Shown piece after piece: positions 33,601 through 58,700 of a stretch of 64,000 bases of DNA. The stretch's first letter is position 1, and the number at the start of each line of letters is the position of its first letter. The translations under genes and the position numbers were made by a program. The notes beneath the pieces were generated by a model, which saw only the letters and a program-made list of their open reading frames with translations, searched no databases and was not told the DNA's origin. This DNA comes from Octopus sinensis (lineage: Eukaryota), in NCBI RefSeq assembly GCF_006345805.1, contig NC_043014.1, positions 7,254,001 to 7,318,000 of the forward strand. The letters run 5' to 3'.

Positions 33601-33753
33601 TTAAAAAAATAAAAGAATACACACACATACAATCTGAAGCATCTGCAGATACAGAAAGAGGTGTGTGTGTGTGTGTGTGTTGGGTACGTGTGTGTGTGTA
33701 CGTGAGTGTGTGTGTGTACATGAGTGTGTGTGTGTGTGTGAGTGTATGAGTGT

Positions 33754-33792
<39 letters not shown>

Positions 33793-33898
33793 TGAGTGTG
33801 TGTGTGTGAGTGTGTGTGTGTGTGTGAGTGTGTGTGTGTGCGTGTGTGTGTGTGTGTGTGAGTGAGTGTGTGTGTGTGTGTGTGTGTTGAGTGTGTGT

Positions 33899-33944
<46 letters not shown>

Positions 33945-36900
33945 TGTGTGTGTGAGTGTGTGTGTGTCTTTGTGTTTGATGCCCTCCATCACTTGACAAC
34001 CGGTGTTGGTGTGTTTATTGCCCCGTAACTTAGCGGTTCAGCCGAAGGGAACAAACAAATGACAACCAGGCTTGAAAACAAATAAGTTCGGGGGACAATT
34101 CGTTTGAGTAAAAGATTTCTTCAAGGCAATGCCCCAGCATGGCCACAGTCTAACTGACTGAAACAAGTAAAAAGTAAAAAAATAACAAAAAGAGAAAATA
34201 GAAAATTAAAAATACAAAAAAAAAAAAAAACAAGAAAAACAACTTAACTTACACGAACTGAATTTTTCCATACAACATCTTCGACTCGACCCAAAGGTTT
34301 GTGTAGGAATTGGCCTGTGAAAATAGATTAAGAACCATCATCATCATCGTCGTCATCATTTGACATCTCCTTTGACAACAGGCACCCATGCTTGCGAAGA
34401 CCTGTTGGGGCAAGTGAAATCGAAATCGGAATCGAAATTGAACCAATCCTATGACTGGCACCCGGCAGATGCCAGGAACCCTGAACTGGTGGTACGTAAA
34501 AAGCACTATCCGAATCATGGCCGATGCCAGTGCCGCCTCTACTGGCTTCCGTGCCGGTGGCACGTAAAAAGCACCATCCGAATCGTGGCTGATGCCAGTG
34601 CCGCCTCTACTGGCTTCTGTGCCGGTGGCACGTAAAAAGCACCATCCGAATCGTGGCCGATGCCAGCGCGGCCTCGACTGGCTTCTGTGCCGGTGGCACA
34701 TAAAAAGCACCATCCGAATCGTGGCCGATGCCAGCGCGGCCTCGACTGGCTTCTGTGCCGGTGGCACGTAAAAAGCACCATCCGAATCGTGGCTGATGCC
34801 AGTGCCGCCTCTACTGGCTTCTGTGCCGGTGGCACGTAAAAAGCACCATCCGAATCGTGGCCGATGCCAGCGCGGCCTCGACTGGCTTCTGTGCCGGTGG
34901 CACGTAAAAAGCACCATCCGAATCGTGGCCGATGCCAGTGCCGCCTCTACTGGCTTCTGTGCCGGTGGCACGTAAAAAGCACCATCCGAATCGTGGCCGA
35001 TGCCAGCGTGGCCTGACTGGCTTCTGTGCCGGTGGCACGTAAAAAGCACCATCCGAATCGTGGCCGATGCCAGCGCCGCCTCGACTGGCTTCTGTGCCGG
35101 TGGCACGTAAAAAGCACCATCCGAATCGTGGCTGATGCCAGTGCCGCCTCTACTGGCTTCTGTGCCGGTGGCACGTAAAAAGCACCATCCGAATCGTGGC
35201 CGATGCCAGCGCCGCCTCTACTGGCTTCTGTGCCAGTGGCACGTAAAAAGCACCATCCGAATCGTGGCCGATGCCAGCACCGCCTCTACTGGCTTCTGTG
35301 CCGGTGGCACATAAAAAGCACCATCCGAATCGTGGCCGATGCCAGTGCCGCCTCTACTGGCTTCTGTGCCGGTGGCACGTAAAAAGCACCATCCGAATCG
35401 TGGCCGATGCCAGCGCCGCCTCGACTGGCTTCTGTGCCGGTGGCACGTAAAATGCACCAATCCGACTGTGGCCGTTGCCAGCCTCGCCTGGCACCTGTGC
35501 GGGTGGCACGTAAAAAGCACCCACTACACTCACGGAGTGGTTGGCGTTAGGAAGGGCATCCAGCTGTAGAAACACTGCCAGATCAGACTGGAGCCTGGTG
35601 CAGCCTTCTGGCTTCCCAGATCCCCGGTCGAACCGTCCAACCCATGCCAGCATGGAAAGCGGACATTAAACGATGATGATGATGATGATGATTTCCCATG
35701 CTGGTTGAGGCAGATTTACTACGACTGGATACCTTTGTCAGTAACCCTCACGTTTTTCTTCCCCTATATAAGGTAATATTTTTCCATGGCTTGACATGCT
35801 TTCACACTATCTTGCATGGAGTATTGGACAGGCTATTCAGTTTGCCTCCAGTTTCGTTCAGGAACATGATGTTGAAATCCACAAAAATGGTGAAACACTG
35901 ATGCCCATTGTCCCTGGATGGGATCCGAGGTGAGTCATCTCACCTATGACTCTCAGTTGTTTTAACACCCAGTACTTAAAGGGACTTGTACTTGTGACGG
36001 CGTTCACCCAGATCAGACTGGGCCTGGTGCAGCCTTCTGGCTTCCCAGACCCCTGTTGAACCGTCCAACCCATGATAGCATGGAAAGCAGACGCTAAACG
36101 ATGATGATGATGATGATGATGATGGAAAGAGCATACTGTAAATTTTGTCGGGCAAGCAGACAGATAGACAGACAGACAGACAGATAAAGATATGAACTTA
36201 CAAAATTAGACCAGCGAACATCACAGTCAACTGGCTGGAGTCGACAGAGGAATATTTCTACAGCTTGGTAAGGCACACGAGCAAACTGGTCAGGTATCGT
36301 GTACAGATTGCACACCGGGTGTTCCTCGGTCTTGCCAATATCAACAAAGAACAACTGGAGGAGAAGGAAGAGGGTGAAGAGAAGTGAGTACATGTTAAAG
36401 AAAGGTGGGAGGGAATTAGAAATAACACAAGGAGAATGGAAATGCAAAAACATAAAATATACATATATAGGCGCAGGAGTGGCTGAGTGGTAAGTAGCTT
36501 GCTAACCAACCACATGGTTCCGGGTTCAGTCCCACTGCTTGGCATCTTGGGCAAGTGTCTTCTGCTATAGCCCCGGGCCAACCAATGCCTTGTGAGTGGA
36601 TTTGGTAGACGGAAACTGAAAGATGCCTGTCGTATATATGTATATATATATATATGTGTGTGTATGTGTGTTTATATGTTTGTGTGTCTGTGTTTGTCCC
36701 CCCCCCAAACATCGCTTGACAACCGATGCTGGTGTGTTTACGTCCCCGTCACTTAGCGGTTCGGCAAAAGAGACCGATAGAATAAGTACTGGGCTTACAA
36801 AGAATAAGTCCCGGGGTCGATTTGCTCGACTAAAGGCGGTGCTCCAGCATGGCCGCAGTCAAATGACTGAAACAAGTAAAAAATACAATGAAACAAATAA

Positions 36901-39900
36901 ACCTAAGTCTGCCCACTAAATCCTCATCATCATTATTCGACCGTGGTCGAGACAATGGAATTTACCATGCTACGCCAGACTTCACGGTCCATCATAGCAT
37001 TACGGAGGTCCCGTTGCTGGATGCCTGATTCCCTGGAGATTACATCAGGGTAGGAGAGTGTGCACCCTCTGGTATTGCGAGTAGATGGCTTCCAGAGGAG
37101 AAGAGTAGAAATTGTTTCGTTTTCAGCTCTACAACAATGTCCAGCAAACTGGACTCTCCTACCTTTCACAAGAGATGACACAGGTGGTAGTTTCCCATAT
37201 ATTTGCATTTTGGTTGGATGACGCTTCCACGAGAGATTTTGAGCTCTCATAAGGAGGCGAGTGTAGGTTCCATCCAACCGCCTCTCAAATCTTTGATAAC
37301 GTCCAGGTTTCTGAGCCATGTAGTAGAATTGGTTCAACTGTGGCTTTGAAGATTTTAAGTTTGAAGTCTCTACTTAGATTTGATGACCAGATCTTATGCA
37401 TGTCATTACAGGCTGACCAGGCCATACCCTTTCTAGTTAGAAAATCTTTTTTCAGATGATGATATGTATGACCCAAGATATTTGTATGAGTATCTTGGCT
37501 CATACTCACTAAAGGCTGACCAGGGGTTAAAGAACAACAACTACTATGATAACAATGATGATGGTGATGGCCACAACACAACACTCAAAGATCAACAAGC
37601 CCCCAACGTCCAGTGGTCAGCTTGTATATACTTACAGTCACTGTGTTTTTCGTAGCACAATTGTTCAGTTTGGACAACTTCACACTGTAAAGAACACAAA
37701 AAAAAAAAAAAATTAAAAATAAGAAAGAACTGATAGCAATCATACCATTGGAAATGGAAGGTAGGAAGTGTGACAGCGGAAGCTCCCCGGTGTCATGTGA
37801 TTCACACATAAAAAGCCCCTTTCAAGTGTTGGGCCCCACGGAGGCAATGACCAATGACCGAGACCTTTGGCAACAATATGCCATGCTTGAGTTGAAGACC
37901 CATCAAGCCGAGTGAAATCATAGCCGGGGTAGATACTGGTGCCACGCAAGTGGCATGTAAAAGCACCCATTACGCTCTGCAAAGTGGTTGGCGTTAGGAA
38001 AGGCATCCAACCAGAGAAACCATGCCAAATCAGACTGGAGTCTGGTGCAGCCCCTCAGCTTACCAGCCCTGGTCAAAAAGTTAAACCCATGCCAGAATGG
38101 ACAATGGACGTTAAAAGCACCTTTTTGATGTAAATAATTTTTGGTGTTAACATGGTCTGATTTGAACTTTTTCTACTACGGAAGGAAGAGCAAGCCTTCT
38201 TTTATCACACTCTCAATTTTGGTCAACTTGCGCCGCAGGGTCTCGGAGGAGATAGTGCTAGTTGAAGGCTACCAAATCTGCCACACACACAGACAACTTC
38301 AGCTTTATATATAAAGATATATATTTATGTATATAAATACACATATACATATATACATACATAGATATATGTACACAGGCACGTATACACATATACGGTG
38401 GCACATCGTGCTGGTGATACGTAAAAGGCACAATCCGATCGTGGCTGTTGCCAGCCTCACCTGGCCCCTGTGCCGGTGGCATGTAAAAAGCACCATCCGA
38501 TCGTGGCCATTTGCCAGTACCGCTTGACTGACCCCTGTGCCAGTAGCACGTAAAAAGCACCCACTACACTCATGGAGTGGTTGGCATTAGGAAGGGCATC
38601 CAGCCGTAGAAACATTGCCAGATCAGACTGGGCCTGGTGCAGCCATCTGGCTTCCCAGACCCCAGTTGAACCGTCCAACCCATGCTAGCAAGGAAAGTGA
38701 ACGCTAAATGATGATGATGATGATGATGATGATGACACAAAGTCATTTCTGTGAATGTGTGCCCAATTTGAATTACAAAAAGGTACTAACCGAAAGAATC
38801 CTTTCGATGTGTTGACTGCACACAGAGTCCCAATTTCCAGTTTCTCTGTGGGGGAAAATAATTAAGAAAAGAAACAAAGAGAATAACAATTAAATGAATA
38901 TAGTTAATTTAAGTTTAAGTTTAAGTTAATTTTTTGGCTCAAAAAGCAAAAAGCAAGGCCATGTAGGGGGACATGGAGTTATGTACAGGGTGGTGTTCAT
39001 GCAAAGAGTTCAGGCCATTTAAGGTCAAGGGAGACTTTGAACCGAGCGGTCGTCGGCATCTTCACCATCTCGTCCGGCAGCTTATTCCACGGATCCGCAA
39101 CCCGGACGGAGAAAGCCCCTCTCTTTCGATTGAGATGAAATCGTCGCAGATAGAGCTTTTCGGAGTGACCCCGCAGCCAACGCTCTGGAGCAGGAGTGAA
39201 GAACAGCTCTTTCGAGAGGTTACACTTTCCGCTTATGATGTTGTGAGCAAGAATGAGATCACCACGGCGTCGTCGTTTTTCTAGAGAATAAAGGTCGAGC
39301 GTCTTCAGCCTTGCACGTAAAACAAGCAAACAATACGTTTAATGTGCACTGTTCTAATGCATATGAATGAAGACGGTTGCATCAAGAAGTGCCGATGTCT
39401 AATCGCGGAGAGAATGTGTGGAATGGGTAGATCCAGGAAGACATGGGATGAAGTGGTAAGAAAGTCAAAGAGGGGATGACAGAGAACCGAGACTTCTAGA
39501 GGTTTGCTGTACTCGAGAAGACTGTATCAGGACAATTAGCCCCAGTCAAGGCGGCGCTGGCAATGGCCACGTTCGGATGGTGCTTTTTATGTGCCACTGG
39601 CACAGGCCTCACAGCTAAAATTTCCATTTGATTTTTCAAACCAAATCAAATCCAATATCAGAAAGCAGAACCAAAATCGAAGTTGATCAACATCAATGGA
39701 AATTGCAGCTGTGGTACCAGTGCCGGTGACAAGTAAGCGAACCATCTGATCGTGGCCGTTGCCAGCACCGTCCCGACCAGCTTCCGTGCCGGTGGCACGT
39801 AAAAGCACCATCCGTTCGTGTCCGTTGCCAGCCTTGCCTGGCCCCCATGCCGGTGGGACGTAGCACCATCCGTTCGTGGCCGTTGCCAGCCTCGTCTGGC

Positions 39901-42900
39901 CCCCGTGCCGGTGGCATGTAAAAAGCACCATCCGATCATGGTCGTTGCCAGCCTCGCCTGGCCCCCGTGCCGGTGGCACGTAAAAAGCACCATCCGTCCG
40001 TGGCCGTTTGCCAGCTCCGTCTGGCACCTGTGTGGGTGGCACGTAAAAAGCACCCACTACACTCATGGAGTGGTTGGCGTTAGGGAGGGCATCCAGCTGT
40101 AGAAACACTGCCAGATCAGACTGGAGCCTGGTGCAGCCTTTTGGCTTCCCAGACCCCAGTTGAACCGTCCAACCCATGCTAGCATGGAAAGTGGGCCCTA
40201 AACGATGATGATGATGATGATGATGATGATGTACTTGACTCAATAGGTCTCCTCAAGCACAGTGTGTATATATATATATCATCATCATCCTTTAACGTCC
40301 GCTTTCCATGCTAGCATGGGTTGGACGATTTGACTGAGGACTGGTGAACCAGATGGCTGCGCCAGACTCCAATCTGATCCGGCAGAGCTTTCAGAGCCAG
40401 ATGCCCTTCCTAACGCCAACCACAGGATTAAACCAACAAACATCCACTTGAGCCGTGACTCTTACCAGCACATGGCCACTTGAGCCAATGTATGTCCACT
40501 GAAAACAATACAAGCACAGTTAATCCAACACATGCCCATCCAAAGGCACACGTGTACAGGTAAACATCCCCAGGTCCAGCTACAATAATACTCCACTGTG
40601 GCCCCAGACAAGTTTTCTGTACCCCCTCAGTGCATTTTAGAGAAACAACTCTGCCTAACCACATCTAAATTCAAGATAAAACAAATGATGAAAATTAAAA
40701 TAAAAAGACAAAAAAAAAAGCCTTACCCAAAGGTTTCTTGTTGGCCAGATCACAAAAGTGGGTGGCCATGCCGAGTGTAAGACTGACCAAATCACTATGG
40801 ACAGCAACAGACTTCTTTTGGCCTTGCCAGATCTCCAAGATCCTCCCAAAGAAGTGACTGGCTGACTTTACATGGAGGACCATAATCTGAAAGGTAAATA
40901 TAGAAGAGATAACATGGAGGATTCCACAAGGTGACTCCACATGGGGGACCATAATCGGAAAGGCAAATACCGAAGAAATAACATGGAGGACCATAATCTG
41001 AAAGGCAAACACTGAAGAAATAACATGGAGGATTCCTCATGGAGGATTCCTCATGGAGGATTCCTCATGGAGGACCATAATCTGAAAGGCAAATACTGAA
41101 GAAATAACATGGAGGACCCCTCATGGAGGACCATAATCTGAAAGGCAAATAATGAAGAAATAACATGGAGGATTCCTCATGGAGGATTCCTCATGGAGGA
41201 CCATAATCTGAAAGGCAAATATAGAAGAAATAACATGGAGGACTCCTCATGGATGGCCGTAATCTGAAAGGCAAATAATGAAGAAATAACATGGAGGACC
41301 ATAATCTGAAAGGCAAATATAGAAGAAATAACATGGAGGATTCCTCATGGAGGATTCCTCATGGAGGACCATAATCTGAAAGGCAAATAATGAAGAAATA
41401 ACATGGAGGACCATAATCTGAAAGGCAAATAATGAAGAAATAACATGGAGGACCCCTTATGGAGGACCATAATCTGAAAGGCAAATATAGAAGAAATAAC
41501 ATGGAGGACTCCTCATGGATGGCCGTAATCTGAAAGGCAAATAATGAAGAAATAACATGGAGGACCATAATCTGAAAGGCAAATATAGAAGAAATAACAT
41601 GGAGGACCCCTCATGGAGGACCATAATCTGAAAGGCAAATACATAAGAAGTAACATGGAGGATTCCTCATGGAGGACCATAATCTGAAAGGCAAATATTG
41701 AAGAAATAACATGGAGGACCATAATCTGAAAGGCAAATACTGAAGAAAAACATGGAGGATTCCTCATGGAGGACCATAATCTGAAAGGCAAATATGAAGA
41801 AAAACATGGAGGACCCCTCATGGAGGACCATAATCTGAAAGGCAAATACATAAGAAGTAACATGGAGGATTCCTCATGGAGGACCATAATCTGAAAGGCA
41901 AATATTGAAGAAATAACATGGAGGACCATAATCTGAAAGGCAAATACTGAAGAAATAACATGGAGGATTCCTCATGGAGGACCATAATCTGAAAGGCAAA
42001 TATTGAAGAAATAACATGGAGGACCCCTCATGGAGGACCATAATCTGAAAGGCAAATACTGAAGAAATAACATAGAGGATTCCTCATGGATGGCCATAAT
42101 CTGAAAGGCAAACATAGAAGAAATAACATGGAGGACTCCACATGGAGGACCATAATCTGAAAGGCAAATATTGAAGAAATAACATGGAGGACCCCTCATG
42201 GAGGACCATAATCTGAAAGGCAAATACTGAAGAAATAACATGGAGGATTCCTCATGGAGGACCATAATCTGAAAGGCAAATACTGAAGAAATAACATGGA
42301 AGACTCCTCATGAAAGGGTGTATGTGTGTGTATATGTATGTGTGCATACATGCGTGCGCATGCATGTGTATATGCGTGTGTATACAGAGGCATGTGTGTA
42401 TGTGAGGAGGGTATGTGTATGCATGTGTGTATATGTGTGTGCTTTTTTTTCCTTGTTTTGACATCAAATGGTAGTTATAAACGAACATCACTGCCGTACA
42501 AACTGTGTTATTCATTTCTAATATTCTCCGAGAACATGTTTGGCCATGTGGAGATGTATTACCTCACCAGGAAACAGGCGAGGGTTAGGGACAGGAAAGG
42601 GGTCAAGCCATAGAAAACGTGCCTCAGCAAACTCCATCTGACCATTGCAAGCATGGAAAACTAGACATTAAAACAATGACGATGATGATGATGGTGGTGG
42701 TGGTGGTGGTGGTGGTGGAGGTAATAATGGTGATGTTGGTGATGGTAGTGGTGATGAAGATGATGATGATGATGATGCTCTTGATGGTGGTGGTTGCGGT
42801 CGTGGTGGTGGATAATGATGATGATGATGATGGTTGTAGTGATGGTGAAGATGGTGACGATGATGATGGTGGTGGTGGTGGTGGTGGTGATGGAGGAGGC

Positions 42901-43155
42901 ATTAATGGTGATGTTGGTGATGGTAGTGGTGGTGGTGATGATGATGATGCTCTTGATGGTGGTGGTAGTGGTGATGATGGTGGTTGTGGTTGTGGTGGTG
43001 GATAATGATGATGATGATGATGATGGTTGAGCGAAACTCGCGCTCTCGCCCACGTACAGTGGTGATGATGGTGATGGTAGCAGTGATGGTGATGTTGGTG
43101 ATGGTAGTGATGATGATGATGATGCTCTTGATGAAGGTCGTAGTGGTGATGGTGA

Positions 43156-43189
<34 letters not shown>

Positions 43190-43206
43190 GGTAGTGGTGA
43201 TGATGA

Positions 43207-43245
<39 letters not shown>

Positions 43246-43248
43246 TGA

Positions 43249-43287
<39 letters not shown>

Positions 43288-44748
43288 TGGTGATGATGAT
43301 GATGGTTGTAGTGATGGTGACGATGATGACGGTGGTGGTGGCAGCAGCAACGACGATAGTGGTGGTGGTGATGGTGTTGATGATGATAATTGTGATGATG
43401 ATGATGACGACGACAACGACAATGACATCACTTACCCTCACATCTCCTTGATGAGGCAGCAGGATGTGTTCGTCGCTGCATCCATTCAAATCAACCCCTG
43501 GCAAAACGCTATGGCGCTGGTTGCAGTTGGAATAGCTCCTGAAACAGACAGAAGCACAAGAAATACAGTCGTTGCGGAACAAGAGAAGGAAGAGGTGTAG
43601 GAGAGGCGGACGGTATGGAGTGGCTGGGTGGTAAGTAGCTTGTTTACCAACCCCAAGGTTCCGGGTTCAGTCCCACTGCATCATGGAACCTTGGGCAAGT
43701 GTCTTCTACTATAGCCTCGGGCCGTCCAAAGCCTTGTGAGTGGATTAGGTAGACGGAAACTGAAAGAAGCCTGTCGTATATATGTAAATATATATATATT
43801 TATAGGCGCAGGAGTGGCTGTGTAGTAAGTAGCTTGCTTACCAACCACATGGTTCCGGGTTCAGTCCCACTGCGTGGAACCTTGGGCAAGTGTCTTCTAC
43901 TATAGCCTCGGGCCGTCCAAAGCCTTGTGAGTGGATTAGGTAGACGGAAACTGAAAGAAGCCTGTCGTATATATGTAAATATATATATATTTATAGGCGC
44001 AGGAGTGGCTGTGTAGTAAGTAGCTTGCTTACCAACCACATGGTTCCGGGTTCAGTCCCACTGCGTGGAACCTTGGGCAAGTGTCTTCTACTATAGCCTC
44101 AGGCCGTCCAAAGCCTTGTGAGCGGATTTGAAAGAAGCCCGTCGTATATATGTATATATATATATATGTGTGTGTGTGTATGTTTGTGTGTCTGTGTTTG
44201 TCCCCCTAGCATCGCTTGACAACCGATGCTGGTGTGTTTACATTTCCGTAACTTAGCGGTTCGGCAAAAGAGACGGATAAAATTACATCAGCCCCGGGCC
44301 GACCAATGCCTTGTGAGTGGATTTGGTAGACAGAAACTGAAAGAAGCCCATCATATATATGTGTGTGTGTTGTGTGTGTGTGTGTGTTTGTGTGTCTGTG
44401 TTTGTCCCCCTAGCATTGCTTGACAATTGATGCTGATGTGTTTACATTTCCATCCCTTAGCGGTTCGGCAAAAGAGACCGATAAAATAAGTACTAGGCAT
44501 ACAAAGAATAAGTCCCGGGGTCGATTTGCTCAACTGAAGGCGGTGCTCCAGCATGGCCGCAGTCAAATGACTGAAACAAGTAAAAGAGTAAAAGAGTAAA
44601 GAGTATAAGGAAGGTCCACTGGTCGACCACCCATGCAAATAACCAAAACAAACAAAAATAATGAACCATACCTGCATTTTCCATACATTTTAATGTTATA
44701 ACACAGAGCATTATCTGGGTTCCGTTCGTTCTCCTGGAAAAGAAAATG

Positions 44749-45673: not shown

Positions 45674-48600
45674 CTATCACCATCACCACCACCGCGAGTA
45701 GATGGCTTCCAGAGGAGAAGAGTAGAAATTGCCTCGTTTTCAGCTCTACAACAATGTCCAGCAAACTGGACTCTTCTACCTTTCACAAGAGATGACACAG
45801 GTGGTAGTTTCCCATATATTTGCATTTTGGTTGGATGACACTTCCACGAGAGATCTTGAGCTCTCGTAAGGAGGCGAGTGTAGGTTGAAGTACAACAGAA
45901 GGGCAAGAAGAGATGTCTTACCGTAGGAGAGACATGTGGTGACACCTGTTGGAAAACAGAGAGACGATGGTGGTTAAGGTGTGTCAGGATGTACTCCCAG
46001 GTAACAGAAAGGCGAATATAAGAGGAGTCAAGTGAAATCATAGCTGTGGTCGATGCTGGTGCCACATAACCAGCACCCATGCTGGTGGCACACAAAAGGT
46101 ACCCACTTGGAGTGGTTGGCATTTAGGAATGGCATCCAGCCATAGAAACCAGGCTGAATCAGACTGGAACCTGGTACAGCTCTCCGGCTTACTAGTTTTC
46201 GGTCAAACCGTCCGACCCGTGCTAGCATGGGAAATGGAGGTATTATTATTTTTGCCTGTAATTGAAAAAGGTATTATAAAAGGAGAAAGGGGCTCTCTAG
46301 CCCGCTTTTGACCAGGCTCCCGTGGCTTTTATGGGGTTTTTTCCACATGAGACCTTTTCTTTTTTCGAAGCGTCTCCTCTATTGGGAGTTTTGTAAATTG
46401 TTCAATTGTTTCGTTGTTGTAAAGCGGGACTTTTTTCTTTCGAAAAAGGGACAAAACCTTTTGTAAGCTTTCATCCTGTTTTGTCCCTTTGTTTTCTAAT
46501 CATGTTTGTCAGCCCTTGTGGCCAATAAAAAGAATTAATTATTATTATTGTTGTTGTTGTTGTTGTTGTTGTTGTTATTGTGGTGGTGATAATGATGATG
46601 GTGGTGGTGGTGGTGGGGACGGTGGTGATGATGATGGCGATGATGGTGGTGGTGATGATGATGGTGGTGGGGACGGTGGTAATGGTGGTGGTGGTGATGG
46701 CGATGATGGTGGTGGTGATGATGATGGTGATGGCGATGATGGTGATGGTAGTGTTGATGATGATGATAATGATGGTGGTGGTGGTGGTGATGGTGGTGGT
46801 GGTGGTGATGGTGATGATGATGGTGGTGGTGGTGGGGACGGTGGTGATGATGATGGTAATGGTGGTGGTGGTGATGGCGATGATGGTGATGGTGGTGGTG
46901 GTGATGATGATGGTGGTGGGGACGGTGGTGGTGGTGGTGGTGATGGCGATGATGGTGGTGGTGGTGGTAGTGTTGATGATGATGATAATGATGGTGGTGG
47001 TGGTGGTGGTGGCGATGGTGGCGGTGATGGTGGTGGTGATGATGATGGTGGTGGTGGTGATGGTGGTGATGATAATGATGATAGAGAGGATTAGACAAGG
47101 TGAGTGAACCGTTATTGAATTAGTGCAGAATGCCGTAGCAGGATACAGTGTTAGAATAAGAAGAGAATGCAACGGTAGAATGAAGACTTACTTCTTGTAT
47201 TGAAGAGAAAAACTTGATGGTTTCGTCCCTGTGTTGACCGCTGCTGTTGTTCAACAATAAAGACTTCAGACTTTTCACTTTCTTTAAATCCATCTTACTC
47301 ATCAGTATGTAAGATTTACCGAGTCGCAAAGGCACCTGGGAAAATAATTAATATCCTTAAATCTTTCAGTCAAATGACAAAGAAGCCCCTAGATTTACCG
47401 AGTCGCAAAGGCACCTGGGAAAATAATAAATGCCTTAAATCTTTAAGAAAGAAGCCCCTAGATTTACCGAGTCGCAAAGGCACCTGGGAAAATAATTAAT
47501 ATCCTTAAATCTTTCAGTCAAATGACAAAGAAGCCCCTAGATTTACCGAGTCGCAAAGGCACCTGGGAAAATAATAAATGCCTTAAATCTTTAAGAAAGA
47601 AGCCCCTAGATTTACCGAGTCGCAAAGGCACCTGGGAAAATAATAAATGCCTTAAATCTTTAAGAAAGAAGCCCCTAGATTTACCGAGTCACAAAGGCAC
47701 CTGGGAAAATAATAAATGCCTTAAATCTTTCAGTCAAATGACAAAGAAGCCCCTAGATTTACCGAGTCGCAAAGGCACCTGGGAAAATAATAAATGCCTT
47801 AAATCTTTAAGAAAGAAGCCCCTAGATTTACCGAGTCGCAAAGGCACCTGGGAAAATAATTAATATCCTTAAATCTTTCAGTCAAATGACAAAGAAGCCC
47901 CTAGATTTACCGAGTCGCAAAGGCACCTGGGAAAATAATAAAGCCTTAAATCTTTAAGAAAGAAGCCCCTAGATTTACCGAGTCGCAAAGGCACCTGGGA
48001 AAATAATAAATGCCTTAAATCTTTAAGAAAGAAGCCCCTAGATTTACCGAGTCACAAAGGCACCTGGGAAAATAATAAATGCCTTAAATCTTTGAGTCAA
48101 ATGAGAAAAAAGCCCCCAGATTTACCGAGTCGCAAAGGCACCTGGGAAAATAATAAATGCCTTAAATCTCTAAGAAAGAAGCCCCTAGATTTACCGAGTC
48201 ACAAAGGCACCTGGGAAAATAATAAATGCCTTAAATCTTTGAGTCAAATGAGAAAGAAGCCCCCAGATTTACCGAGTCGCAAAGGCACCTGGGAAAATAA
48301 TAAATGCCTTAAATCTTTAAGAAAGAAGCCCCTAGATTTACCAAGTCGCAAAGGCACCAGGGAAAATAATAAATGCCTTAAATCTTTGAGTCAAATGAGA
48401 AAGAAGCCCCTAGACTTACCAAGTCGCAAAGGCACCTGGGAAAATAATTAATGCCTTAAATCTTTGAGTCAAATGAGAAAGAAGCCCCTAGATTTACCGA
48501 GTCGCAAAGGCACCTGGGAAAATAATAAATGCCTTAAATCTTTAAGAAAGAAGCCCCTAGATTTACCGAGTCACAAAGGCACCTGGGAAAATAATAAATG

Positions 48601-51600
48601 CCTTAAATCTTTGAGTCAAATGAGAAAGAAGCCCCTAGATTTACCATGTCGCAAAGGCACCTGGGAAAATAATAAATGCCTTAAATCTTTGAGTCAAATG
48701 GGAAAGAAGCCCCTAGATTTACCGAGTCGCAAGGCCACCTGGGAAAATAATAAATGCCTTAAATCTTTGAGTCAAATGAGAAAGAAGCCCCTAGATTTAC
48801 CGAGTCGCAAAGGCACCTGGGAAAATAATAAATGCCTTAAATCTTTGAGTCAAATGAGAAAGAAGCCCCTAGACTTACCAAGTCGCAAAGGCACCTGGGA
48901 AAATAATAAATGCCTTAAATCTTTGAGTCAAATGAGAAAGAAGCCCCTAGACTTACCAAGTCGCAAAGGCACCTGGGAAAATAATAAATGCCTTAAATCT
49001 TTGAGTCAAATGAGAAAGAAGCCCCTAGACTTACCGAGTCGCAAAGGCACCTGGGAAAATAATAAATGCCTTAAATCTTTGAGTCAAATGAGAAAGAAGC
49101 CCCTAGATTTACCGAGTTGCAAAGGCACCTGGGAAAATAATTAATGCCTTAAATCTTTGAGACAAATGAGAAAGAAGCCCCTAGATTTACCGAGTCGCAA
49201 AGGCACCTGGGAAATTAATAAGTGCCTTAAATCTTTGAGTCAAATGAGAAAGAAGCCCCCAGATTTACCGAGTCACAAAGGCACCTGGGAAAATAATTAA
49301 TATCCTTAAATCTTTAAGAAAGAAGCCCCTAGATTTACCGAGTCGCAAAGGCACCTGGGAAAATAATAAATGCCTTAAATCTTTAAGAAAGAAGCCCCTA
49401 GATTTACCGAGTCACAAAGGCACCTGGGAAAGTAATAAATGCCTTAAATCTTTAAGAAAGAAGCCCCTAGATTTACCGAGTCACAAAGGCACCTGGGAAA
49501 ATAATAAATGCCTTAAATCTTTGAGTCAAATGAGAAAGAAGCCCCTAGATTTACCATGTCGCAAAGGCACCTGGGAAAATAATAAATGCCTTAAATCTTT
49601 GAGTCAAATGGGAAAGAAGCCCCTAGATTTACCGAATCGCAAAGGCACCAGGGAAAATAATAAATGCCTTAAATCTTTGAGTCAAATGAGAAAGAAGCCC
49701 CTAGAGTTACCAAATCGCAAAGGCACCTGGGAAAATAATAAATGCCTTAAATCTTTAAGAAAGAAGCCCCTAGATTTACCGAGTCACAAAGGCACCTGGG
49801 AAAGTAATAAATGCCTTAAATCTTTAAGAAAGAAGCCCCTAGATTTACCGAGTCACAAAGGCACCTGGGAAAATAATAAATGCCTTAAATCTTTGAGTCA
49901 AATGAGAAAGAAGCCCCTAGATTTACCATGTCGCAAAGGCACCTGGGAAAATAATAAATGCCTTAAATCTTTGAGTCAAATGGGAAAGAAGCCCCTAGAT
50001 TTACCGAATCGCAAAGGCACCAGGGAAAATAATAAATACCTTAAATCTTTGAGTCAAATGAGAAAGAAGCCCCTAGATTTACAGAGTCGCAAAGGCACCT
50101 GGGAAAATAATAAATGCCTTAAATCTTTGAGTCAAATGAGAAAGAAGCCCCTAGATTTACCGAGTCGCAAAGGCACCTGGGAAAATAATAAATGCCTTAA
50201 ATCTTTGAGTCAAATGAGAAAGAAGCCCCTAGATTTACCAAATCGCAAAGGCTCCTGGGAAAATAATTAATGCCTTAAATCTTTGAGTCAAATGAGAAAG
50301 AAGCCCCTAGATTTACCGAGTCGCAAGGCCACCTGGGAAAATAATAAATGCCTTAAATCTTTGAGTCAAATGAGAAAGAAGCCCCTAGATTTACCGAATC
50401 GCAAAGGCACCTGGGAAAATAATAAATGCCTTAAATCTTTGAGTCAAATGAGAAAGAAGCCCCTAGATTTACCGAGTCGCAAAGGCACCTGGGAAAATAA
50501 TAAATGCCTTAAATCTTTGAGTCAAATGAGAAAGAAGCCCCTAGACTTACCAAGTCGCAAAGGCACCTGGGAAAATAATAAATGCCTTAAATCTTTGAGA
50601 CAAATGAGAAAGAAGCCCCTAGACTTACCAAGTCGCAAAGGCACCTGGGAAAATAATAAATGCCTTAAATCTCTGAGTCAAATGAGAAAGAAGCCCCTAG
50701 ATTTACCGAGTCGCAAAGGCACCTGGGAAAATAATTAATGCCTTAAATCTTTGAGACAAATGAGAAAGAAGCCCCTAGATTTACCATGTCGCAAAGGCAC
50801 CTGGGAAAATAATAAATGCCTTAAATCTTTGAGTCAAATGGAAAGAAGCCCCTAGATTTACCGAATCGCAAGGCACCAGGGAAAATAATAAATGCCTTAA
50901 ATCTTTGAGTCAATGAGAAAGAAGCCCCTAGATTTACCAATCGCAAAGGCACCAGGGAAAATAATAAATGCCTTAAATCTTTAAGAAAGAAGCCCCTAGA
51001 TTTACCGAGTCACAAAGGCACCTGGGAAAATAATAAATGCCTTAAATCTTTGAGTCAAATGAGAAAGAAGCCCCTAGATTTACATGTCGCAAAGGCACCT
51101 GGGAAAATAATAAATGCCTTAAATCTTTGAGTCAAATGAGAAAGAAGCCCCTAGATTTACCGAGTCGCAAGGCCACCTGGGAAAATAATAAATGCCTTAA
51201 ATCTTTGAGTCAAATGGGAAAGAAGCCCCTAGATTTACCGAATCGCAAAGGCACCAGGGAAAATAATAAATGCCTTAAATCTTTGAGTCAAATGAGAAAG
51301 AAGCCCCTAGATTTACCAAATCGCAAAGGCACCTGGGAAAATAATTAATGCCTTAAATCTTTGAGTCAAATGAGAAAGAAGCCCCTAGATTTACCGAGTC
51401 GCAAGGCCACCTGGGAAAATAATAAATGCCTTAAATCTTTGAGTCAAATGAGAAAGAAGCCCCTAGATTTACCGAGTCGCAAAGGCACCCGGGAAAATAA
51501 TAAATGCCTTAAATCTTTGAGTCAAATGAGAAAGAAGCCCCTAGATTTACCGAGTCGCAAAGGCACCTGGGAAAATAATAAATGCCTTAAATCTTTGAGT

Positions 51601-54600
51601 CAAATGAGAAAGAAGCCCCTAAATTTACCGATTCACAAAGGCACCTGGGAAAATAATAAATGCCTTAAATCTTTGAGTCAAATGAGAAAGAAGCCCCTAG
51701 ACTTACCAAGTCGCAAAGGCACCTGGGAAAATAATAAATGCCTTAAATCTTTGAGTCAAATGAGAAAGAAGCCCCTACATGGTCACTAGACATGCTAAAA
51801 ATAACAACTAATACATGTACTAATCAGGTTCTTAGAAAATTGAAGGACAAAGTGAATATTTCGGGTTTAGTCTGTCTTTATTTATTGTTACTGAAGACTC
51901 AGAGTGGCTGAACAGTTTGAGAAGTTTGCTTTGCAACCATGAAGTCCTAGGTTCAATCCTACAAGGTGGCATCTTGGGAAAGTGTTTTCAACCATAGTCG
52001 TGAACTGAACCAAGGTTTGTGAATGAAACTAGGTAGATGGCAACTGTACCGAAGCCTGTCATATGGGCTATCATCAGCAGTGATGCCATGTGCGTGGATC
52101 TCTGTGATGCTCTGTCACCATCCAATTCTTCAAATTGGGAGTCTGAGGAGGCTGTGATGATTCTTTCATGTGTGTCTGTGTTTGTCTCCCTAGCATTGCT
52201 TGACAACCGATGCTGGTGTGTTTACGTCCCCGTCACTTAGCGGTTCGGCAAAAGAGACCAATAGAATAAGTACTGGGCTTACAAAAGAATAAGTCCCGGG
52301 GTCGAGTTGCTCGATTAAAGGCGGTGCTCCAGCATGGGCGCAGTCAAAATGACTGAAACAAGTAAAAAGTAAAAAAGAAAAAAAATATATATACATACAT
52401 ATGTATGTGTATGTCTGTGTGTCTGTGTTCGTCAAAGCCAACCACTGTTTAAACAACCGGTGTTGGTTTGTTTACACCCCTGTAACTCAGCAGTTCGCCA
52501 AAAGAAACTGATAGAATAAGTACCAGACTTAAAACGGAGTGAGATAAATAAATACTGGGCGGCGGCGGGGGGGGGGCATTCTGTTTGAGTGAAACTCTTG
52601 AAGGCAGTGCTGCAGCATGGGCAGAGCCCAATGACTGAAGCAAGTAATAAACAAAAACAAAAAAAAAAAAACAAAGTAAAAGATTCACAGAAAATAAGAC
52701 GGATCTTTTCCTTTTGAACGGCAGACAATTTCTGATTAACTAAACACTTTAAAACTTTGTATACTGCTAGAATGTGTCAAAAGAAAACATTTTTTTCTCT
52801 TGGCTTTCTTTGAGAAAATTGTAATTTGTTTGTTTAACGTAGTTTAATTTTTCGAATTTTAACCAATCCTATGCTCTCTTTTGAGCTAAAATCATTTGCC
52901 GCGTCTAAAACTGAGACAACATCCTGTAACTAACCCTAAACCTCCCCCCTAACCCTAACCCTAAATTTTTTTTTCTTAATTGTTAAATTAATTTAATTGT
53001 TGCGCGTGCAAAAAAACCTAAAGCAATGGAATTTGATTAATTTAACAATTTAGAAAAAAAAATTAGGGGTTAGTGTTAGGGGGGAGGTTTAGGGTTAGTT
53101 ACAGGATGTTGTCTCAGTTTTAGATGTAGCAAATGATTTTAGTTGAATGGAGGTAATCGATTGGTTAAAATTGCCGAAATACTCGGATTTTCAGACGAAA
53201 TATCTTACAAACTATAGAATTTTCTCAATAAAACCAAGAGAAAATGATGTTTTATAAACACATTCTACCAGTATACGAAGTTTAAAAGTGTTTAGTTAAC
53301 TTGGTTAAAATTGCCGAAATGCTCAGATTTTCAGACAAAATATTGTACAAACTATAGAATTTTCTCAATAAAGCCAAGAGAAAAAGATGTTTTATAAACA
53401 CATTCTACCAGTATACGAAGTTTAAAAGTGTTTAGTTAACTTGGTTAAAATTGCCGAAATGCTTGGATTTTCAGACGAAATATCTTACAAACCATAGAAT
53501 TTTCTCAATAAAACCAAGAGAAAATGATGTTTTATAAACACATTCTACCAGTATACGAAGTTTAAAAGTGTTTAGTTACCTTGGTTAAAATTGCCGAAAT
53601 GCTTGGATTTTCAGACGAAATATCTTACAAACTATAGAATTTTCTCAATAAAACCAAGATAAATGATGTTTTATAAACACATTCTACCAGTATACGAAGT
53701 TTAAAAGTGTTTAGTTAACTAGAAATTGTGTTGATATCTGCCGTTCAAAAGGAAAAGATCCAAAAAGACAAAACAACACAAACAACAAACAAACAAACAG
53801 GGGAATGTGTTCCAGTTCTTAATCTGTACTTACCGTTTTATCGTTGTAATGGGGGTAATATTTACTCATCGTCTGCATTCTAAGACCGACGTGGACCTTT
53901 TTAGATGGGAACTGATAATGAACAATACAGGTGGCATCGGAAATCTTCAGGTCACAAAGAACACTATCAGGACACACTATAAAATAACAAGAACAATAAT
54001 AATGATGATAATGATGATGATGATGATGATGATGATGACGGTTTCAAATTTTGCCACAAGGCAGCAATGCTCGTATGGGTCAGAAGGAATTTGTTCATTG
54101 CTTGTACCAATGAAATACCTATTTCTTTACTACCCACAAGGGGCTAAACACAGAAGGGACAAACAAGGACAGACAAACGGATTAAGTCGATTACATCGAC
54201 CCTAGTGCGTAACTGGTACTTTATTTATCGACCCTGAAAGGATGAAAGGCAAAGTCGACCTCGGCGGAATTTGAACTCAGAACGTAACGGCAGACGAAAT
54301 ACCTATTTCTTTACTACCCACAAGGGGCTAAACATAGAGGGGACAAACAAGGACAGACAAACGAATTAAGTCGATTACATCGGCCCCAGTGCGTAACTGG
54401 TACTTAATTTATCGACCCAGAAAGGACGAAAGGCAAAGTCGACATTGGTGGAATTTGAATTCACAACGTAAAGACAGATGAAATACTTATTTCTTTACTA
54501 CTCACAAGGGGCTAAACACAGAGAGGACAAACAAACGAATTAAGTCGATTACATCGGCCCCAGTGCGTAACTGGTACTTAATATATCGACCCAGAAAGGA

Positions 54601-55744: not shown

Positions 55745-58700
55745 CAACAACTGAGCAAATATAAAGATCTTGAAATAGAAATCAGCAAAATGTGGAACCT
55801 GAAGACTAAAACAATACCTGTTGTCATAGGTGCCCTGGGAATGATAGCAAAAGGGGCTGATTGCTACCTAACTCAGATACCAGGAAACCCCAAAATGGCA
55901 GAAATTCAAAAGATAGTGCTCATGGGAACTGCTCATATCCTACGCAAAATACTCTCTATGTCATCCCAAGGTTTAAAACAAACTTTTTTTAAACTTTTTT
56001 TATTTATTTATTTATTAGACATTCACTAATACAACACCAAAAAAAAAACCCCAAATATATGGCACACTAGGCATAACAACAATGTGAACTTCCAGCCTGT
56101 TGTCTCTTGAGGTCTCTGGGTGAGACTTGGAGCCAACTTGTACAGACATAAAGCAAAAGTCAAACATAGAATCATAATTCTTTTCTTTTATTCTTTTACT
56201 AGTTTCAGTCATTTGACTGCGACCATGCTGGAGCACCGCCTTTAGTCGAGCAAATCGATTCCGGGACTTTGTAAGTCCAGTACTTATTCTATCGGTCTCT
56301 TCTGCTGAACCGCTAAGTGATAATGTTGGTGGTGGTGGTAGTGATGATGGTGGTGGTGGTGGTGGTAGTGATAATGTTGGTGGTGGTGGTAGAGATGATG
56401 TTGGTGGTGGTGGTGGTGATGTTGATGGTGGTGATGGTGGTGGTGGTGATAATGATGGTGGTGGTGGTGGTGGTAGTGATAATGTTGGTGGTGGTGGTGG
56501 AAATGTTGATGGTGGTGGTGGTGATAATGTTGGTGGTGGTGGTGGTGGTGGTGGTGTGATGTTGATGGTGGTGGTGGTGGTTGTTATGTGATTGTCATGG
56601 TGGTGGTGATTGATGATTATGACGATGATGGTGATAGTGATGGTGGTAGCGATTGCAGTGGTGATGACGAGCATGACAACAACGATGCTGGTGATGACAG
56701 CGTCATTCTCCCAGGTCAAACAGAAGACATGATGCTCTCCAGCTCCCCAGACCTCACAAATGTGTACCGTATCACCGACACTACAACTTCCATAGTAACC
56801 CACTTGTGATGATGAGGAAGGAGCAGAAGAGGCAGAAGAGGGGAGATGTACTTACAAATAAAACCTTGTGACAACTCTGATCCCCATCGGTGAAGATGAT
56901 TACTTTCTCGCCTTGGATGGTCAGGTCTGGAAGGAGTTCGATTAGTTTCCTCTCACGGCCATCTTCCGTTGTAATCATTGGAATCTGAGAGAAAAAAAAA
57001 GTAAAAAGGCTTAGTAGAAGACACTTGCTCAAGGTGCCACATAGTAGAATTGAACCTGAAACTTAGGGGTCAGACAGTAAACTTTTTAACCCAATAGCCA
57101 TGCTTAGCTACACCAGCACATTCACTCACACAGACCACACTACACTACATGGTAATCGCTATTTGAGATTACAGTCTCCAATTCTACATGAATTACAGAC
57201 TGTAAAAATGAAATAAAAAATGAAATAAAATGAAATAAAAAAGAAATCAAAAAGAAATACAATGAAAGCCAACTGCATCTCACTCACCTGTTTAACTCGG
57301 CCGTAGGTGGATGCTTCTATCATGTCCGTAATGACAATAACAACATCCTCCAGTGCATTCATGGCAAATGTTCTGACATGAGACGTCCAATTACTACCAA
57401 AGATCATCACCTGGTTTTGCAGATTAGATCTCTGCTTCGAGAGCAGCACTTGCTTCTTCAGGGACCGCATAAGATCTCGAATCTGTAATGAAAAACGGAA
57501 ATAAAATAAAGGTAAGATGACATACACATTCATCATCATCATTTAGTGTCCGCTTTCCATGCTAGCATGGGTTGGACGGTTCAACTGGGGTCTGTGAAGC
57601 CGGAAGGCTTCATCAGGCCCAGTCAGATCTGGCAGTGTTTCTACGGCTGGATGCCCTTCCTAACGCCAACCACTCCGTGAGAGTAGTGGATGCTTTTTAC
57701 GTGCCACCCGCACAGGTGCCAGACAGAGCTGGCAAATGGCCATGAACGGATGGTGCTTTTATGTGCCACCGGCACGGGGGCCAGGCGAGGCTGGCAACGG
57801 ACACGAACAGATGGTGCTTTTACGTGCCACTGGCACGGGGGCCAGGCGAGGCTCATTCATAAAATCTTCTGGCACATTTACAAAGTGATTATGTCATGGG
57901 CTGTTCTTTCTCGCCACTGGAGAACAATTCCTTTCAGGTGAGCACGTGTTTCTAATGCACTTTATTCCTTAGAGTGAGGGGACTTTGGGACACTTGGTGT
58001 TTCAACATTGCTGTATATCTTCAGTCAAAGCTACCCTGGACTAATGAATCTAACAACTTTTCCTTTCAGATGAATGTGTGTTCATAATACATTTGATTAT
58101 TTAACATAAGGAGACTTTGTGACACCTGGTGTTTCAATATCATTGTACCTCCTCAGTCAAAGCTAACCCAGACTAATGAATCGAACAAGAATAGCAATGA
58201 GCATGCACAAGGTGAATTCAAAAAAATGTCTGAATTTATTTTTAACAGTCAAAACTAATGTTGTGTGGGAAGTAACACCCACGCCTTGGCTGGCTTCCGT
58301 GCCGGTGGCACGTTAAAAGCACCGACCGATCGTGGCCGATGCCAGACTCCCCTAGCACCTGTACAGGTGGCACGTAAAAAGCACCCACTACACTCGTGGA
58401 GTGGTTGGCGTTAGGAAGGGCATCCAGCTGTAGAAACACTGCCAGATCAGACTGGAGCCTGGTGCAGCCCCTGGCTTCCCAGACCCCAGTCGAACCGTCC
58501 AACCCATGCTAGCATGAAAAACGGACGCTAAACGATGAGGATGATTGAATGTATTGTGTGAAGATATTGCATCAAGTTTTGCCAAAAGCTTGATGGTGCT
58601 CCAAGCTCGAAACCTTCCAGAAAATTCAGCAGACTTTTGGCAATGATGCCATGGACAAAAGTCAGATAAAGGAGTGGTGCATGTCTTGCTAGTATATTAT

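What the first reader, a model, noticed from the sequence alone, without database searches (positions are those of the whole stretch)
40871..42312. About 26-copy array of the exon W10 acceptor, largely open in all three frames
Seen on the minus strand: the 42-nt unit atgttatttcttcagtatttgcctttcag|ATTATGGTCCTCC translates stop-free as [14 protein letters not shown]. The optional 14-nt module shifts the frame, but the other frames are also mostly open (ORFs 41513..41929, 41972..42265). The nearest intact decoy (exon-like start at 40997) is 111 nt upstream of the true start at 40886, in frame and stop-free, so its use would add 37 aa at the start of the Tudor domain. Microhomology between exonic GTCCTCCATG and intronic GTCTTCCATG explains the unit boundary. 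Unlike the W7 array there is no GT after the AG, so recursion is not available.
Basis: partly seen in the sequence, partly recalled or inferred. Interest (0 to 1): 0.72.

Follow-up and report, generated by a model that had tools for sequence, protein, structure and literature searches.

The report
Tandem array of decoy splice acceptors
A minisatellite in an intron of a mollusc-type TDRD12 (germline piRNA helicase) gene has copied the splice acceptor and first 13 bases of a Tudor-domain exon about 25 times; this kind of repeat is already known as a "mirage" and is most likely a tolerated by-product of a repeat-rich genome.

Summary
On the minus strand, 42311..40916 holds 25 copies of a 42-nt unit (29 nt of intron end plus 13 nt of exon start). 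They are interleaved with 23 intact and 2 degenerate 14-nt modules. The authentic copy follows at 40915..40874. Twenty-four decoys keep AG|ATTA.

The gene is a mollusc-type TDRD12. Five mollusc orthologues have an intron at exactly this position and no insertion, so 40886 is the authentic acceptor.

"Open in three frames" is not meaningful: 12.5% of shuffled units also lack stops. Only the decoy at 40997 is in frame and stop-free (+37 aa). The other 23 hit a stop.

This matches "mirage" minisatellites, tandem repeats that span an exon-intron boundary, described in amphioxus. The human ABCA7 VNTR is a donor-side analogue.

The same gene has a second such array (W7). Scallop TDRD12 has five, one of them at the homologous acceptor. 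Abalone TDRD12 has three. An annotated abalone isoform enters one array from a decoy acceptor and stops early.

Arrays cover 26-31% of these loci, so boundary-spanning arrays need no functional explanation. Decoy use in this gene remains untested.

The parts
40916..42311 (-). Decoy part of the array: 25 A units (acceptor plus 13 nt of exon start), 23 B modules of 14 nt and 2 degenerate B modules. 24 units keep an intact AG.
40874..40915 (-). Authentic (proximal) unit: 29 nt of intron end (ATGTTATCTCTTCTATATTTACCTTTCAG) plus the first 13 nt of exon W10. It has two private substitutions, T8C and G21A.
   Evidence: Orthologue alignment and intron position:
40727..40886 (-). Exon W10 (160 nt, phase 0 start, phase 1 end). 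It encodes [20 protein letters not shown]..., the start of an extended Tudor domain.
   Evidence: Pfam TUDOR, E 3.9e-8, profile positions 7-119, match starting 2 residues before the junction. Collinear with scallop and limpet TDRD12.
43436..43538 (-). Exon W9 (..LLPHQGDVR), whose donor (GAGG|gtaagt, last exon base 43436) pairs with the W10 acceptor. The intron is 2549 nt.
40985..41026 (-). Nearest intact decoy unit. Its exon-like start is 40997, 111 nt upstream of 40886. It is the only decoy that is in frame and stop-free (+37 aa).
40943..40984 (-). Unit between that decoy and the authentic site. It has lost its AG (CAG>CCG) and carries two more private changes.
42295..42304 (-). Distal-edge GTCTTCCATG, the imperfect partner of the exonic GTCCTCCATG (40871..40880). 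This is the microhomology at the array boundaries.
47336..51777 (-). Second array of the same kind in the same gene (W7). The unit is 78/69 nt in about 53 copies, with at least 48 copies of TTTTCCCAG|GTG. Each unit is intron end plus the first 24 nt of putative exon 47335..47191.
   Evidence: The exon is collinear with scallop TDRD12.

Best explanation
The array is a 'mirage'-type minisatellite. A roughly 56-nt segment spanning the 3' end of the W9-W10 intron and the first 13 nt of exon W10 was duplicated in tandem. This probably happened by slippage or unequal exchange between the near-identical GTC(T/C)TCCATG motifs. The array then grew and was homogenised by unequal exchange, extending into the intron.

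The gene is a mollusc-type TDRD12, with a DEAD-like helicase followed by Tudor domains. The authentic acceptor is the proximal copy at 40886. The 24 intact upstream copies are decoys with core signals of equal strength (polypyrimidine tract, AG, first 16-17 exon bases).

Inferred: the spliceosome mainly picks the proximal copy, because only that copy is followed by a real exon body and a donor 160 nt downstream (exon definition). Any splicing to a decoy would give a transcript with a premature stop, except from 40997. Such a transcript would be lost or yield a truncated protein.

The array is best read as a tolerated by-product of a very high local rate of minisatellite formation, not as a device.
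For: Shown:
- Structure, copy number and edges.
- Variants are shared among interior units in higher-order blocks. Most private substitutions lie at the edges: the three proximal A units, the two degenerate B modules and the distal B. A few interior modules (A unit 4 and two B modules) also carry one each. This is the pattern reported for mirages (PMC3087553).
- Gene identity: Pfam TUDOR hits. A collinear BLASTP match to Mizuhopecten TDRD12 with E 2e-44.
- The junction GDVR|IMVLHV aligns without a gap to GEVK|VLVTNV and its equivalents. An intron sits at exactly that place in scallop, limpet, abalone, oyster and ark clam.
- The same class is found elsewhere. There is a second array at W7 in this gene. 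Scallop TDRD12 has 5 boundary-spanning arrays, including a 128-nt x 4.1 array at the homologous acceptor. Abalone has 3, including an 82-nt x 20 acceptor array.
- In scallop and abalone the annotated full-length protein uses the copy that adjoins the exon.
- Arrays cover 26% of the window, 31% of the scallop locus and 27% of the abalone locus. Only 4-10% of located boundaries lie in arrays, so there is no enrichment to explain.

From the literature:
- Amphioxus mirages keep their AG/GT signals yet do not disturb normal splicing (PMC3087553; PMC3902484).
Against: - There is no transcript evidence for this gene. The main use of 40886 is inferred from orthologues, not observed.
- Decoys and the true site are indistinguishable in their core signals (16-17 pyrimidines in the last 20 nt). 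Distal decoys are transcribed first, so substantial decoy use cannot be excluded.
- An annotated abalone isoform (X3, XP_048253461.1) enters the 82-nt array from a decoy acceptor and ends at a premature stop. This shows that such arrays may not be fully silent.
- No close relative of the source species was available, so the age and polymorphism of the array are unknown.
- Copy number depends on how well the assembly resolved the array.
Confidence: 0.78

Rival explanations
1. The array is a functional dosage control. Decoy acceptors capture the W9 donor and yield stop-containing transcripts that are degraded. Array length, which is probably polymorphic, would then tune TDRD12 output in the germline.
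For: - 24 decoys match the true site in core signal strength, and 23 of them lead to a stop.
- An abalone TDRD12 isoform annotated from a decoy in a similar array ends prematurely.
- The length of the human ABCA7 boundary VNTR alters splicing (PMC5954066).
- Scallop has an independent array at the same homologous acceptor.
Against: - Boundaries lie in arrays less often than array coverage predicts.
- With 5 of about 74 scallop boundaries in arrays, a shared boundary is expected with probability about 0.07 per window array in scallop alone, and about 0.2 over both window arrays and all five species.
- Units differ in sequence and length between species, and limpet, oyster and ark clam lack the array.
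- Amphioxus mirages do not disturb splicing.
- The abalone isoform is a computed gene model. It may rest on ambiguously placed reads.
Confidence: 0.1
2. The nearest intact decoy (40997) is a genuine alternative acceptor. It would yield a protein isoform with 37 extra residues at the start of the Tudor domain.
For: It is the only decoy that is in frame and stop-free. The exon would be 271 nt, still within the range for exon definition.
Against: - All five orthologues align without a gap across the junction.
- The insert is a hydrophobic repeat-derived peptide placed between the conserved G-[DE]-V-[KR] and the first strand of the domain.
- Being in frame is a 1-in-3 event, and stop-freeness over 37 codons follows from the stop-free unit.
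Confidence: 0.05
3. The array is coding, either as an exonic repeat or as a separate ORF on either strand.
For: ORFs of up to 138 aa on the minus strand (the longest stop-free stretch is 152 codons).
Against: - There are 22 stops on the minus strand and 107 on the plus strand.
- The openness is matched by 12.5% of shuffles.
- The frame continuous with W10 is open only for the last 150 nt upstream of the exon.
- Orthologues have no such segment.
Confidence: 0.02
4. The copy number, or the array itself, is an assembly artefact.
For: Minisatellites are hard to assemble. A misassembled mirage was reported for amphioxus BflGb6.
Against: The units carry structured variants in higher-order blocks and have diverged edges. 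That pattern is expected of a real array. Comparable arrays occur in independent scallop and abalone assemblies.
Confidence: 0.05

Closest known systems
'Mirage' minisatellites of amphioxus (Adh3, troponin C, globins BflGb6/BflGb9, PGBD5)
   Same: Both are tandem repeats whose unit spans an exon-intron boundary, and the array lies in the intron next to the authentic boundary. Many units keep AG or GT. Interior units are homogenised and edge units diverged. BflGb6 has the same layout: the 3' end of the intron plus the 5' part of the exon (PMC3087553; PMC3902484).
   Different: - The host here is a mollusc-type gene, not a cephalochordate one.
- There are 26 copies, against 3-6 in BflGb6.
- The unit is compound (42 + 14 nt).
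- Silence of the decoys and length polymorphism were shown for amphioxus but are untested here.
Human ABCA7 intron-18 VNTR
   Same: A 25-bp intronic VNTR starts at the splice site of the flanking exon and repeats it. Use of the next copy retains one unit and gives a premature stop. Array length affects splicing (PMC5954066).
   Different: It lies on the donor side and no exon sequence is in the unit. Its functional effect is shown in patients. Nothing comparable is known here.
Internal tandem repeats at exon-intron boundaries of human segmental-duplication genes
   Same: These repeats overlap boundaries, and they alter splicing patterns and can form new introns (PMC2812944).
   Different: Those cases were detected as differences between paralogues and often involve coding repeats. 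The array here is purely intronic decoys.
Boundary-spanning arrays in scallop and abalone TDRD12
   Same: They occur in the same gene family with the same architecture. One is the 128-nt x 4.1 array at the homologous acceptor in scallop. Another is the 82-nt x 20 acceptor array in abalone, which has an annotated decoy-derived isoform.
   Different: The unit sequences are unrelated, so the expansions were independent. Most scallop cases are on the donor side.

Membership tests
Mirage minisatellite (tandem repeat spanning an exon-intron boundary) | Minisatellite-type tandem array (units of tens of nt, several copies) | tested here: met
   26 copies of a 42-nt unit with optional 14-nt modules. 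The best TRF score is 1299.
Mirage minisatellite (tandem repeat spanning an exon-intron boundary) | The unit contains both intron and exon sequence of one authentic boundary, and the array abuts that boundary | tested here: met
   The unit is 29 nt of intron end plus 13 nt of exon W10. The boundary is authenticated by Pfam, by gap-free orthologue alignment and by conserved intron position in five molluscs. There is no transcript evidence from the source species.
Mirage minisatellite (tandem repeat spanning an exon-intron boundary) | Many repeats retain the splice signal | tested here: met
   24 of 25 upstream units keep AG.
Mirage minisatellite (tandem repeat spanning an exon-intron boundary) | Concerted evolution inside the cluster, with boundary units excluded from it | tested here: met
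   Most private substitutions lie in the three proximal A units, the two degenerate B modules and the distal B. A few interior modules also carry one. Interior variants are shared in higher-order blocks.
Mirage minisatellite (tandem repeat spanning an exon-intron boundary) | Regular splicing is not disturbed | not testable with these tools
   No RNA data are available. Indirectly, the annotated full-length scallop and abalone proteins use the copy adjoining the exon, but abalone isoform X3 uses a decoy.
Mirage minisatellite (tandem repeat spanning an exon-intron boundary) | Length instability or polymorphism | not testable with these tools
   Only a single haplotype is available.
Recursive splice site (AG|GT ratchet point) | The acceptor is directly followed by a donor (AG|GTRAGT) | tested here: not met
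   All units read CAG|ATTATGG. The only GT-containing candidates (CCAT|GTTATT, ATG|GTCCTC) are poor donors.
Tandem (NAGNAG-type) acceptors | Alternative AGs a few nt apart that share one branch point and tract | tested here: not met
   The spacing is 42-84 nt, and each copy has its own tract.
Coding tandem repeat (exonic VNTR) | One frame is open through the array and continuous with the flanking exons | tested here: not met
   There are 6-8 stops per frame. The exon frame is open only from 41036. Orthologues lack the segment.
TDRD12 / Yb-type Tudor-helicase (host gene) | A DEAD-type helicase core followed by extended Tudor domain(s), collinear with named TDRD12 proteins | tested here: met
   - BLASTP against Mizuhopecten TDRD12: 29% identity over 438 aa, E 2e-44, collinear from the helicase into the Tudor domain.
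- The best collinear hits are named TDRD12 in scallop, abalone and oyster.
- Weak DEAD-box matches in the PDB.
- Two Pfam TUDOR hits.
- Only the part of the gene inside the window was examined.

The most novel reading that the evidence does not exclude
Acceptor and donor arrays at TDRD12 exon boundaries may be a recurrent, selected feature in molluscs. They would act as length-variable decoy traps that set the dosage of a piRNA-pathway helicase through unproductive splicing. The independent array at the same homologous acceptor in scallop would then be convergence rather than coincidence.
Probability: 0.08. Interest if true: 0.65.

Novelty: new member of a known kind. Interest (0 to 1): 0.38.

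Why it matters
The array is a natural experiment in 3' splice-site choice. Twenty-four decoys with the same tract, AG and first 16-17 exon bases lie upstream of the real acceptor in a germline gene that is probably essential.

If splicing stays accurate, that is a clean demonstration that exon context, not the core signal, selects the site. If it does not, array length becomes a heritable modifier of TDRD12 output.

In the papers I retrieved, the 'mirage' class is named only in amphioxus.

There is also a practical point for annotation. Spliced reads with fewer than 18 nt beyond the junction cannot tell the copies apart, so gene models and junction counts in such arrays are unreliable.

Tried and rejected
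- Word-indexed protein search with the exon alone and with 338 aa of joined exons found nothing. The exhaustive HMMER search was needed to find orthologues.
- No hit exceeded 36% identity. No close relative of the source species was available, so the array could not be dated.
- An exact scan of metagenome contigs for a 28-nt core of the unit gave 0 matches.
- RNA folding of the proximal 291 nt gave z = -0.62. There is no structure that would hide decoys or expose the true site.
- The coding reading was rejected by stop counts and the shuffle test.
- The recursive-splicing and NAGNAG readings were rejected from the sequence.
- A dispersed-repeat origin was rejected, because all 26 core matches lie in the array.
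- The original mirage paper (Canestro et al. 2002, PMC117041) is not held. It is cited only through PMC3087553 and PMC3902484.
- The GenBank scallop protein P0072 was not on record for locus retrieval. The RefSeq isoform P0151 worked.
- I did not score splice sites with a trained model, because none is available offline. Strength was compared only by sequence identity and pyrimidine content.
- The source organism was not identified. It is mollusc-like by best hits. A cephalopod origin is only my guess from the repeat landscape.

Full report
**What is there.**
- On the minus strand, 42311..40943 consists of two kinds of module.
  - There are 25 'A' units of 42 nt, with consensus ATGTTATTTCTTCAGTATTTGCCTTTCAG|ATTATGGTCCTCC. 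Two of them are 40 and 41 nt.
  - There are 23 'B' modules of 14 nt (ATGAGGAATCCTCC, with GG and AG variants).
- Two degenerate B modules follow (40942..40916), then a final A unit at 40915..40874. Its AG (40888-40887) precedes exon W10.
- A 22-nt core matches 26 times in the window, all inside the array, against 0 expected by chance.
- 24 upstream units keep AG|ATTA(T/C)GG. The unit nearest the true site (40984..40943) reads CCG.
- Every module boundary is TCCTCC|ATG.
- GTCTTCCATG occurs once, at the distal edge (42295..42304). GTCCTCCATG in the exon (40871..40880) closes the array.
- The distal half is a regular 56-nt (B+A) array (TRF, 7.1 copies, 92% matches). I therefore take 56 nt as the founding unit, with B later lost or multiplied across the recurring 9-mer.

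**The exon and the gene.**
- W10 (40886..40727, 160 nt, donor TTGG|gtaagg) encodes [20 protein letters not shown]...
- When W10 is joined to W9 (43538..43436..LLPHQGDVR) and to the downstream exons, Pfam TUDOR matches from two residues before the junction (E 3.9e-8). A later Tudor domain scores 5.4e-17.
- The word-indexed protein search found nothing. An exhaustive HMMER search found about 2000-aa proteins that are collinear with the helicase end, W7, W9, W10, W11 and W12. Their sources name them TDRD12 in scallop, abalone and oyster.
- BLASTP against scallop TDRD12 gives 29% identity over 438 aa, E 2e-44. GDVR|[18 protein letters not shown] aligns without a gap to GEVKVLVTNVVDASHYFVRLLE. Limpet gives the same result.
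- In the genomic loci of scallop, limpet, abalone, oyster and ark clam, an intron lies at exactly this position.
- So 40886 is an old, authentic acceptor. No orthologue has extra residues there.

**Reading frames.**
- The A unit has no stop trinucleotide in any frame. Of the array's 22 minus-strand stops, 21 are the TGA of module B.
- 12.5% of shuffles of the 42-mer are equally stop-free. The long ORFs follow from repeating a short stop-free unit.
- Read from the W9 phase, 23 of 24 decoys meet a stop after 14-139 codons. Only 40997 (+111 nt) is open, adding 37 hydrophobic residues.

**What distinguishes the true site.**
- Nothing in the core signals does. The tracts are 16-17 pyrimidines in 20, the last six intron bases are the same TTTCAG, and the first 16-17 exon bases are identical.
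- The authentic unit differs from the consensus at four positions. Two are private (T8C, G21A). The other two (TA at positions 14-15) are a variant shared with interior units.
- No RNA structure stands out (z = -0.62).
- AG is followed by AT, so strict recursion is impossible, and the GTs inside the unit are poor donors.
- The likely discriminator is context. Only the proximal copy is followed by an exon body and a donor 160 nt away. This is an inference.

**Known class.**
[quoted passage not shown] They are reported for Adh3, troponin C, globins and PGBD5.
- Their reported properties are as follows (PMC3087553; PMC3902484):
  - Units run from 10 to 160 bp, and many keep AG or GT.
  - Array length varies between haplotypes.
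  - Interior units are homogenised and edge units diverged.
  - Normal splicing is not disturbed.
- The W10 array meets every structural criterion. That includes a concentration of private substitutions at the edges.
- Human analogues exist.
  - The ABCA7 intron-18 VNTR begins at, and repeats, the exon-18 donor. One-unit retention gives a premature stop, and array length affects exon skipping (PMC5954066).
  - Internal tandem repeats lie at exon-intron boundaries in segmental-duplication genes (PMC2812944).

**How common it is here.**
- The same gene has a second array at W7 (47336..51777; 78/69-nt unit; at least 48 acceptor copies). Each unit is intron end plus the first 24 nt of the exon.
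- In scallop TDRD12, 5 of about 74 boundaries lie in arrays.
  - Four are donors: 60 nt x 9.8, 51 x 15, 60 x 8.6 and 69 x 7.9.
  - One is an acceptor with a 128-nt x 4.1 array, and it is the homologue of W10.
- In abalone, 3 of about 78 boundaries lie in arrays. One is an 82-nt x 20 acceptor array.
- Limpet has only one boundary inside a tiny 16-nt, 2.2-copy repeat. Oyster has none. In ark clam the only hit is a 30-nt coding repeat that covers a whole exon.
- Arrays (period at least 10, at least 2.5 copies) cover the following fractions of each locus:

| Locus | Covered by arrays |
|---|---|
| window | 25.8% |
| scallop | 31% |
| abalone | 26.8% |
| ark clam | 14.6% |
| limpet | 3.3% |
| oyster | 0% |

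- Boundaries are therefore in arrays less often than random placement would give. Boundary-spanning arrays track array load.
- The shared boundary with scallop has a chance probability of about 0.07 for that species. Over both window arrays and all five species it is about 0.2. The units are unrelated in sequence and length.
- I read the shared boundary as coincidence, and I flag it as unexplained.

**Are decoys used?**
- This is unknown for the gene in the window.
- The annotated full-length proteins of scallop and abalone use the copy that adjoins the exon.
- Abalone isoform X3 (XP_048253461.1) ends ...QIQGLSLHAL-PEHRASVSNSDSLYLCVSDTGLVSPCPG*. That is a read-through of the 82-nt array entered at a decoy acceptor.
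- It is a computed model and may rest on ambiguously placed reads. Still, it shows that decoy use with a premature stop is at least annotated in this gene family.

**Verdict.**
- The structure belongs to a described class, and the local minisatellite load explains it adequately.
- The functional readings (dosage trap, 37-aa isoform) remain possible but have no support.
- It is of interest mainly as a natural test of acceptor choice and as an annotation hazard.

Noticed in passing
window 47336..51777 (minus strand); putative exon 47335..47191: A second boundary-spanning array lies in the same gene. The unit is 78/69 nt in about 53 copies, with at least 48 copies of TTTTCCCAG|GTGCC. Each unit also carries CG|GTAAAT 16 nt downstream (35 copies), that is, an acceptor plus a donor. 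The last copy runs into an exon ([19 protein letters not shown]...) that is collinear with scallop TDRD12.
   Followed up: partly
L001 31611..32130 (Mizuhopecten yessoensis TDRD12): A 128-nt x 4.1 array copies the acceptor and the first ~77 nt of the exon homologous to W10. Two decoy copies read cacag|GTGTAAGT and cacag|GGGTAAGT, with a donor-like GTAAGT two to three bases after the AG. The unit is unrelated in sequence to the window's unit.
   Followed up: partly
L003 74765..76399 (Haliotis rufescens TDRD12): An 82-nt x 20 array copies an acceptor plus ~30 nt of exon. Annotated isoform X3 (XP_048253461.1, 1757 aa) enters the array at a decoy and stops at a TGA in the next unit.
   Followed up: partly
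L001 8567..9145, 33753..34523, 37051..37569, 57237..57797; L003 60072..60946: These are donor-side boundary arrays in scallop and abalone TDRD12. An example is ...CCCTACCAG|GTCAGTAAT x 15. The first copy is the annotated donor in each case.
   Followed up: partly
window, whole: 25.8% of the window is tandem arrays of period at least 10. A 62-68-nt family (GGTGGCACGTAAAAAGCACCATCCGA...) recurs on both strands at about ten places, for example 10983..11694, 34488..35521 and 39720..40054.
   Followed up: no
window 38791..36354 (minus strand): W11 (38845..38791) ends in phase 2 but W12 (36354..36202) starts in phase 0. A small exon must lie between them. Scallop has one there (YHRVKVCDITGVNSPGDRIKAE). 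I did not locate it.
   Followed up: no
window 42677..43341: A long degenerate (TGATGATGG)n / (TGG)n array lies in the same intron. It starts about 95 nt downstream of the W9 donor.
   Followed up: no
window 37373..36936 and 6852..6442 (minus strand): Two similar ORF fragments occur here (..[38 protein letters not shown]..). They are probably remnants of a retroelement inside introns.
   Followed up: no
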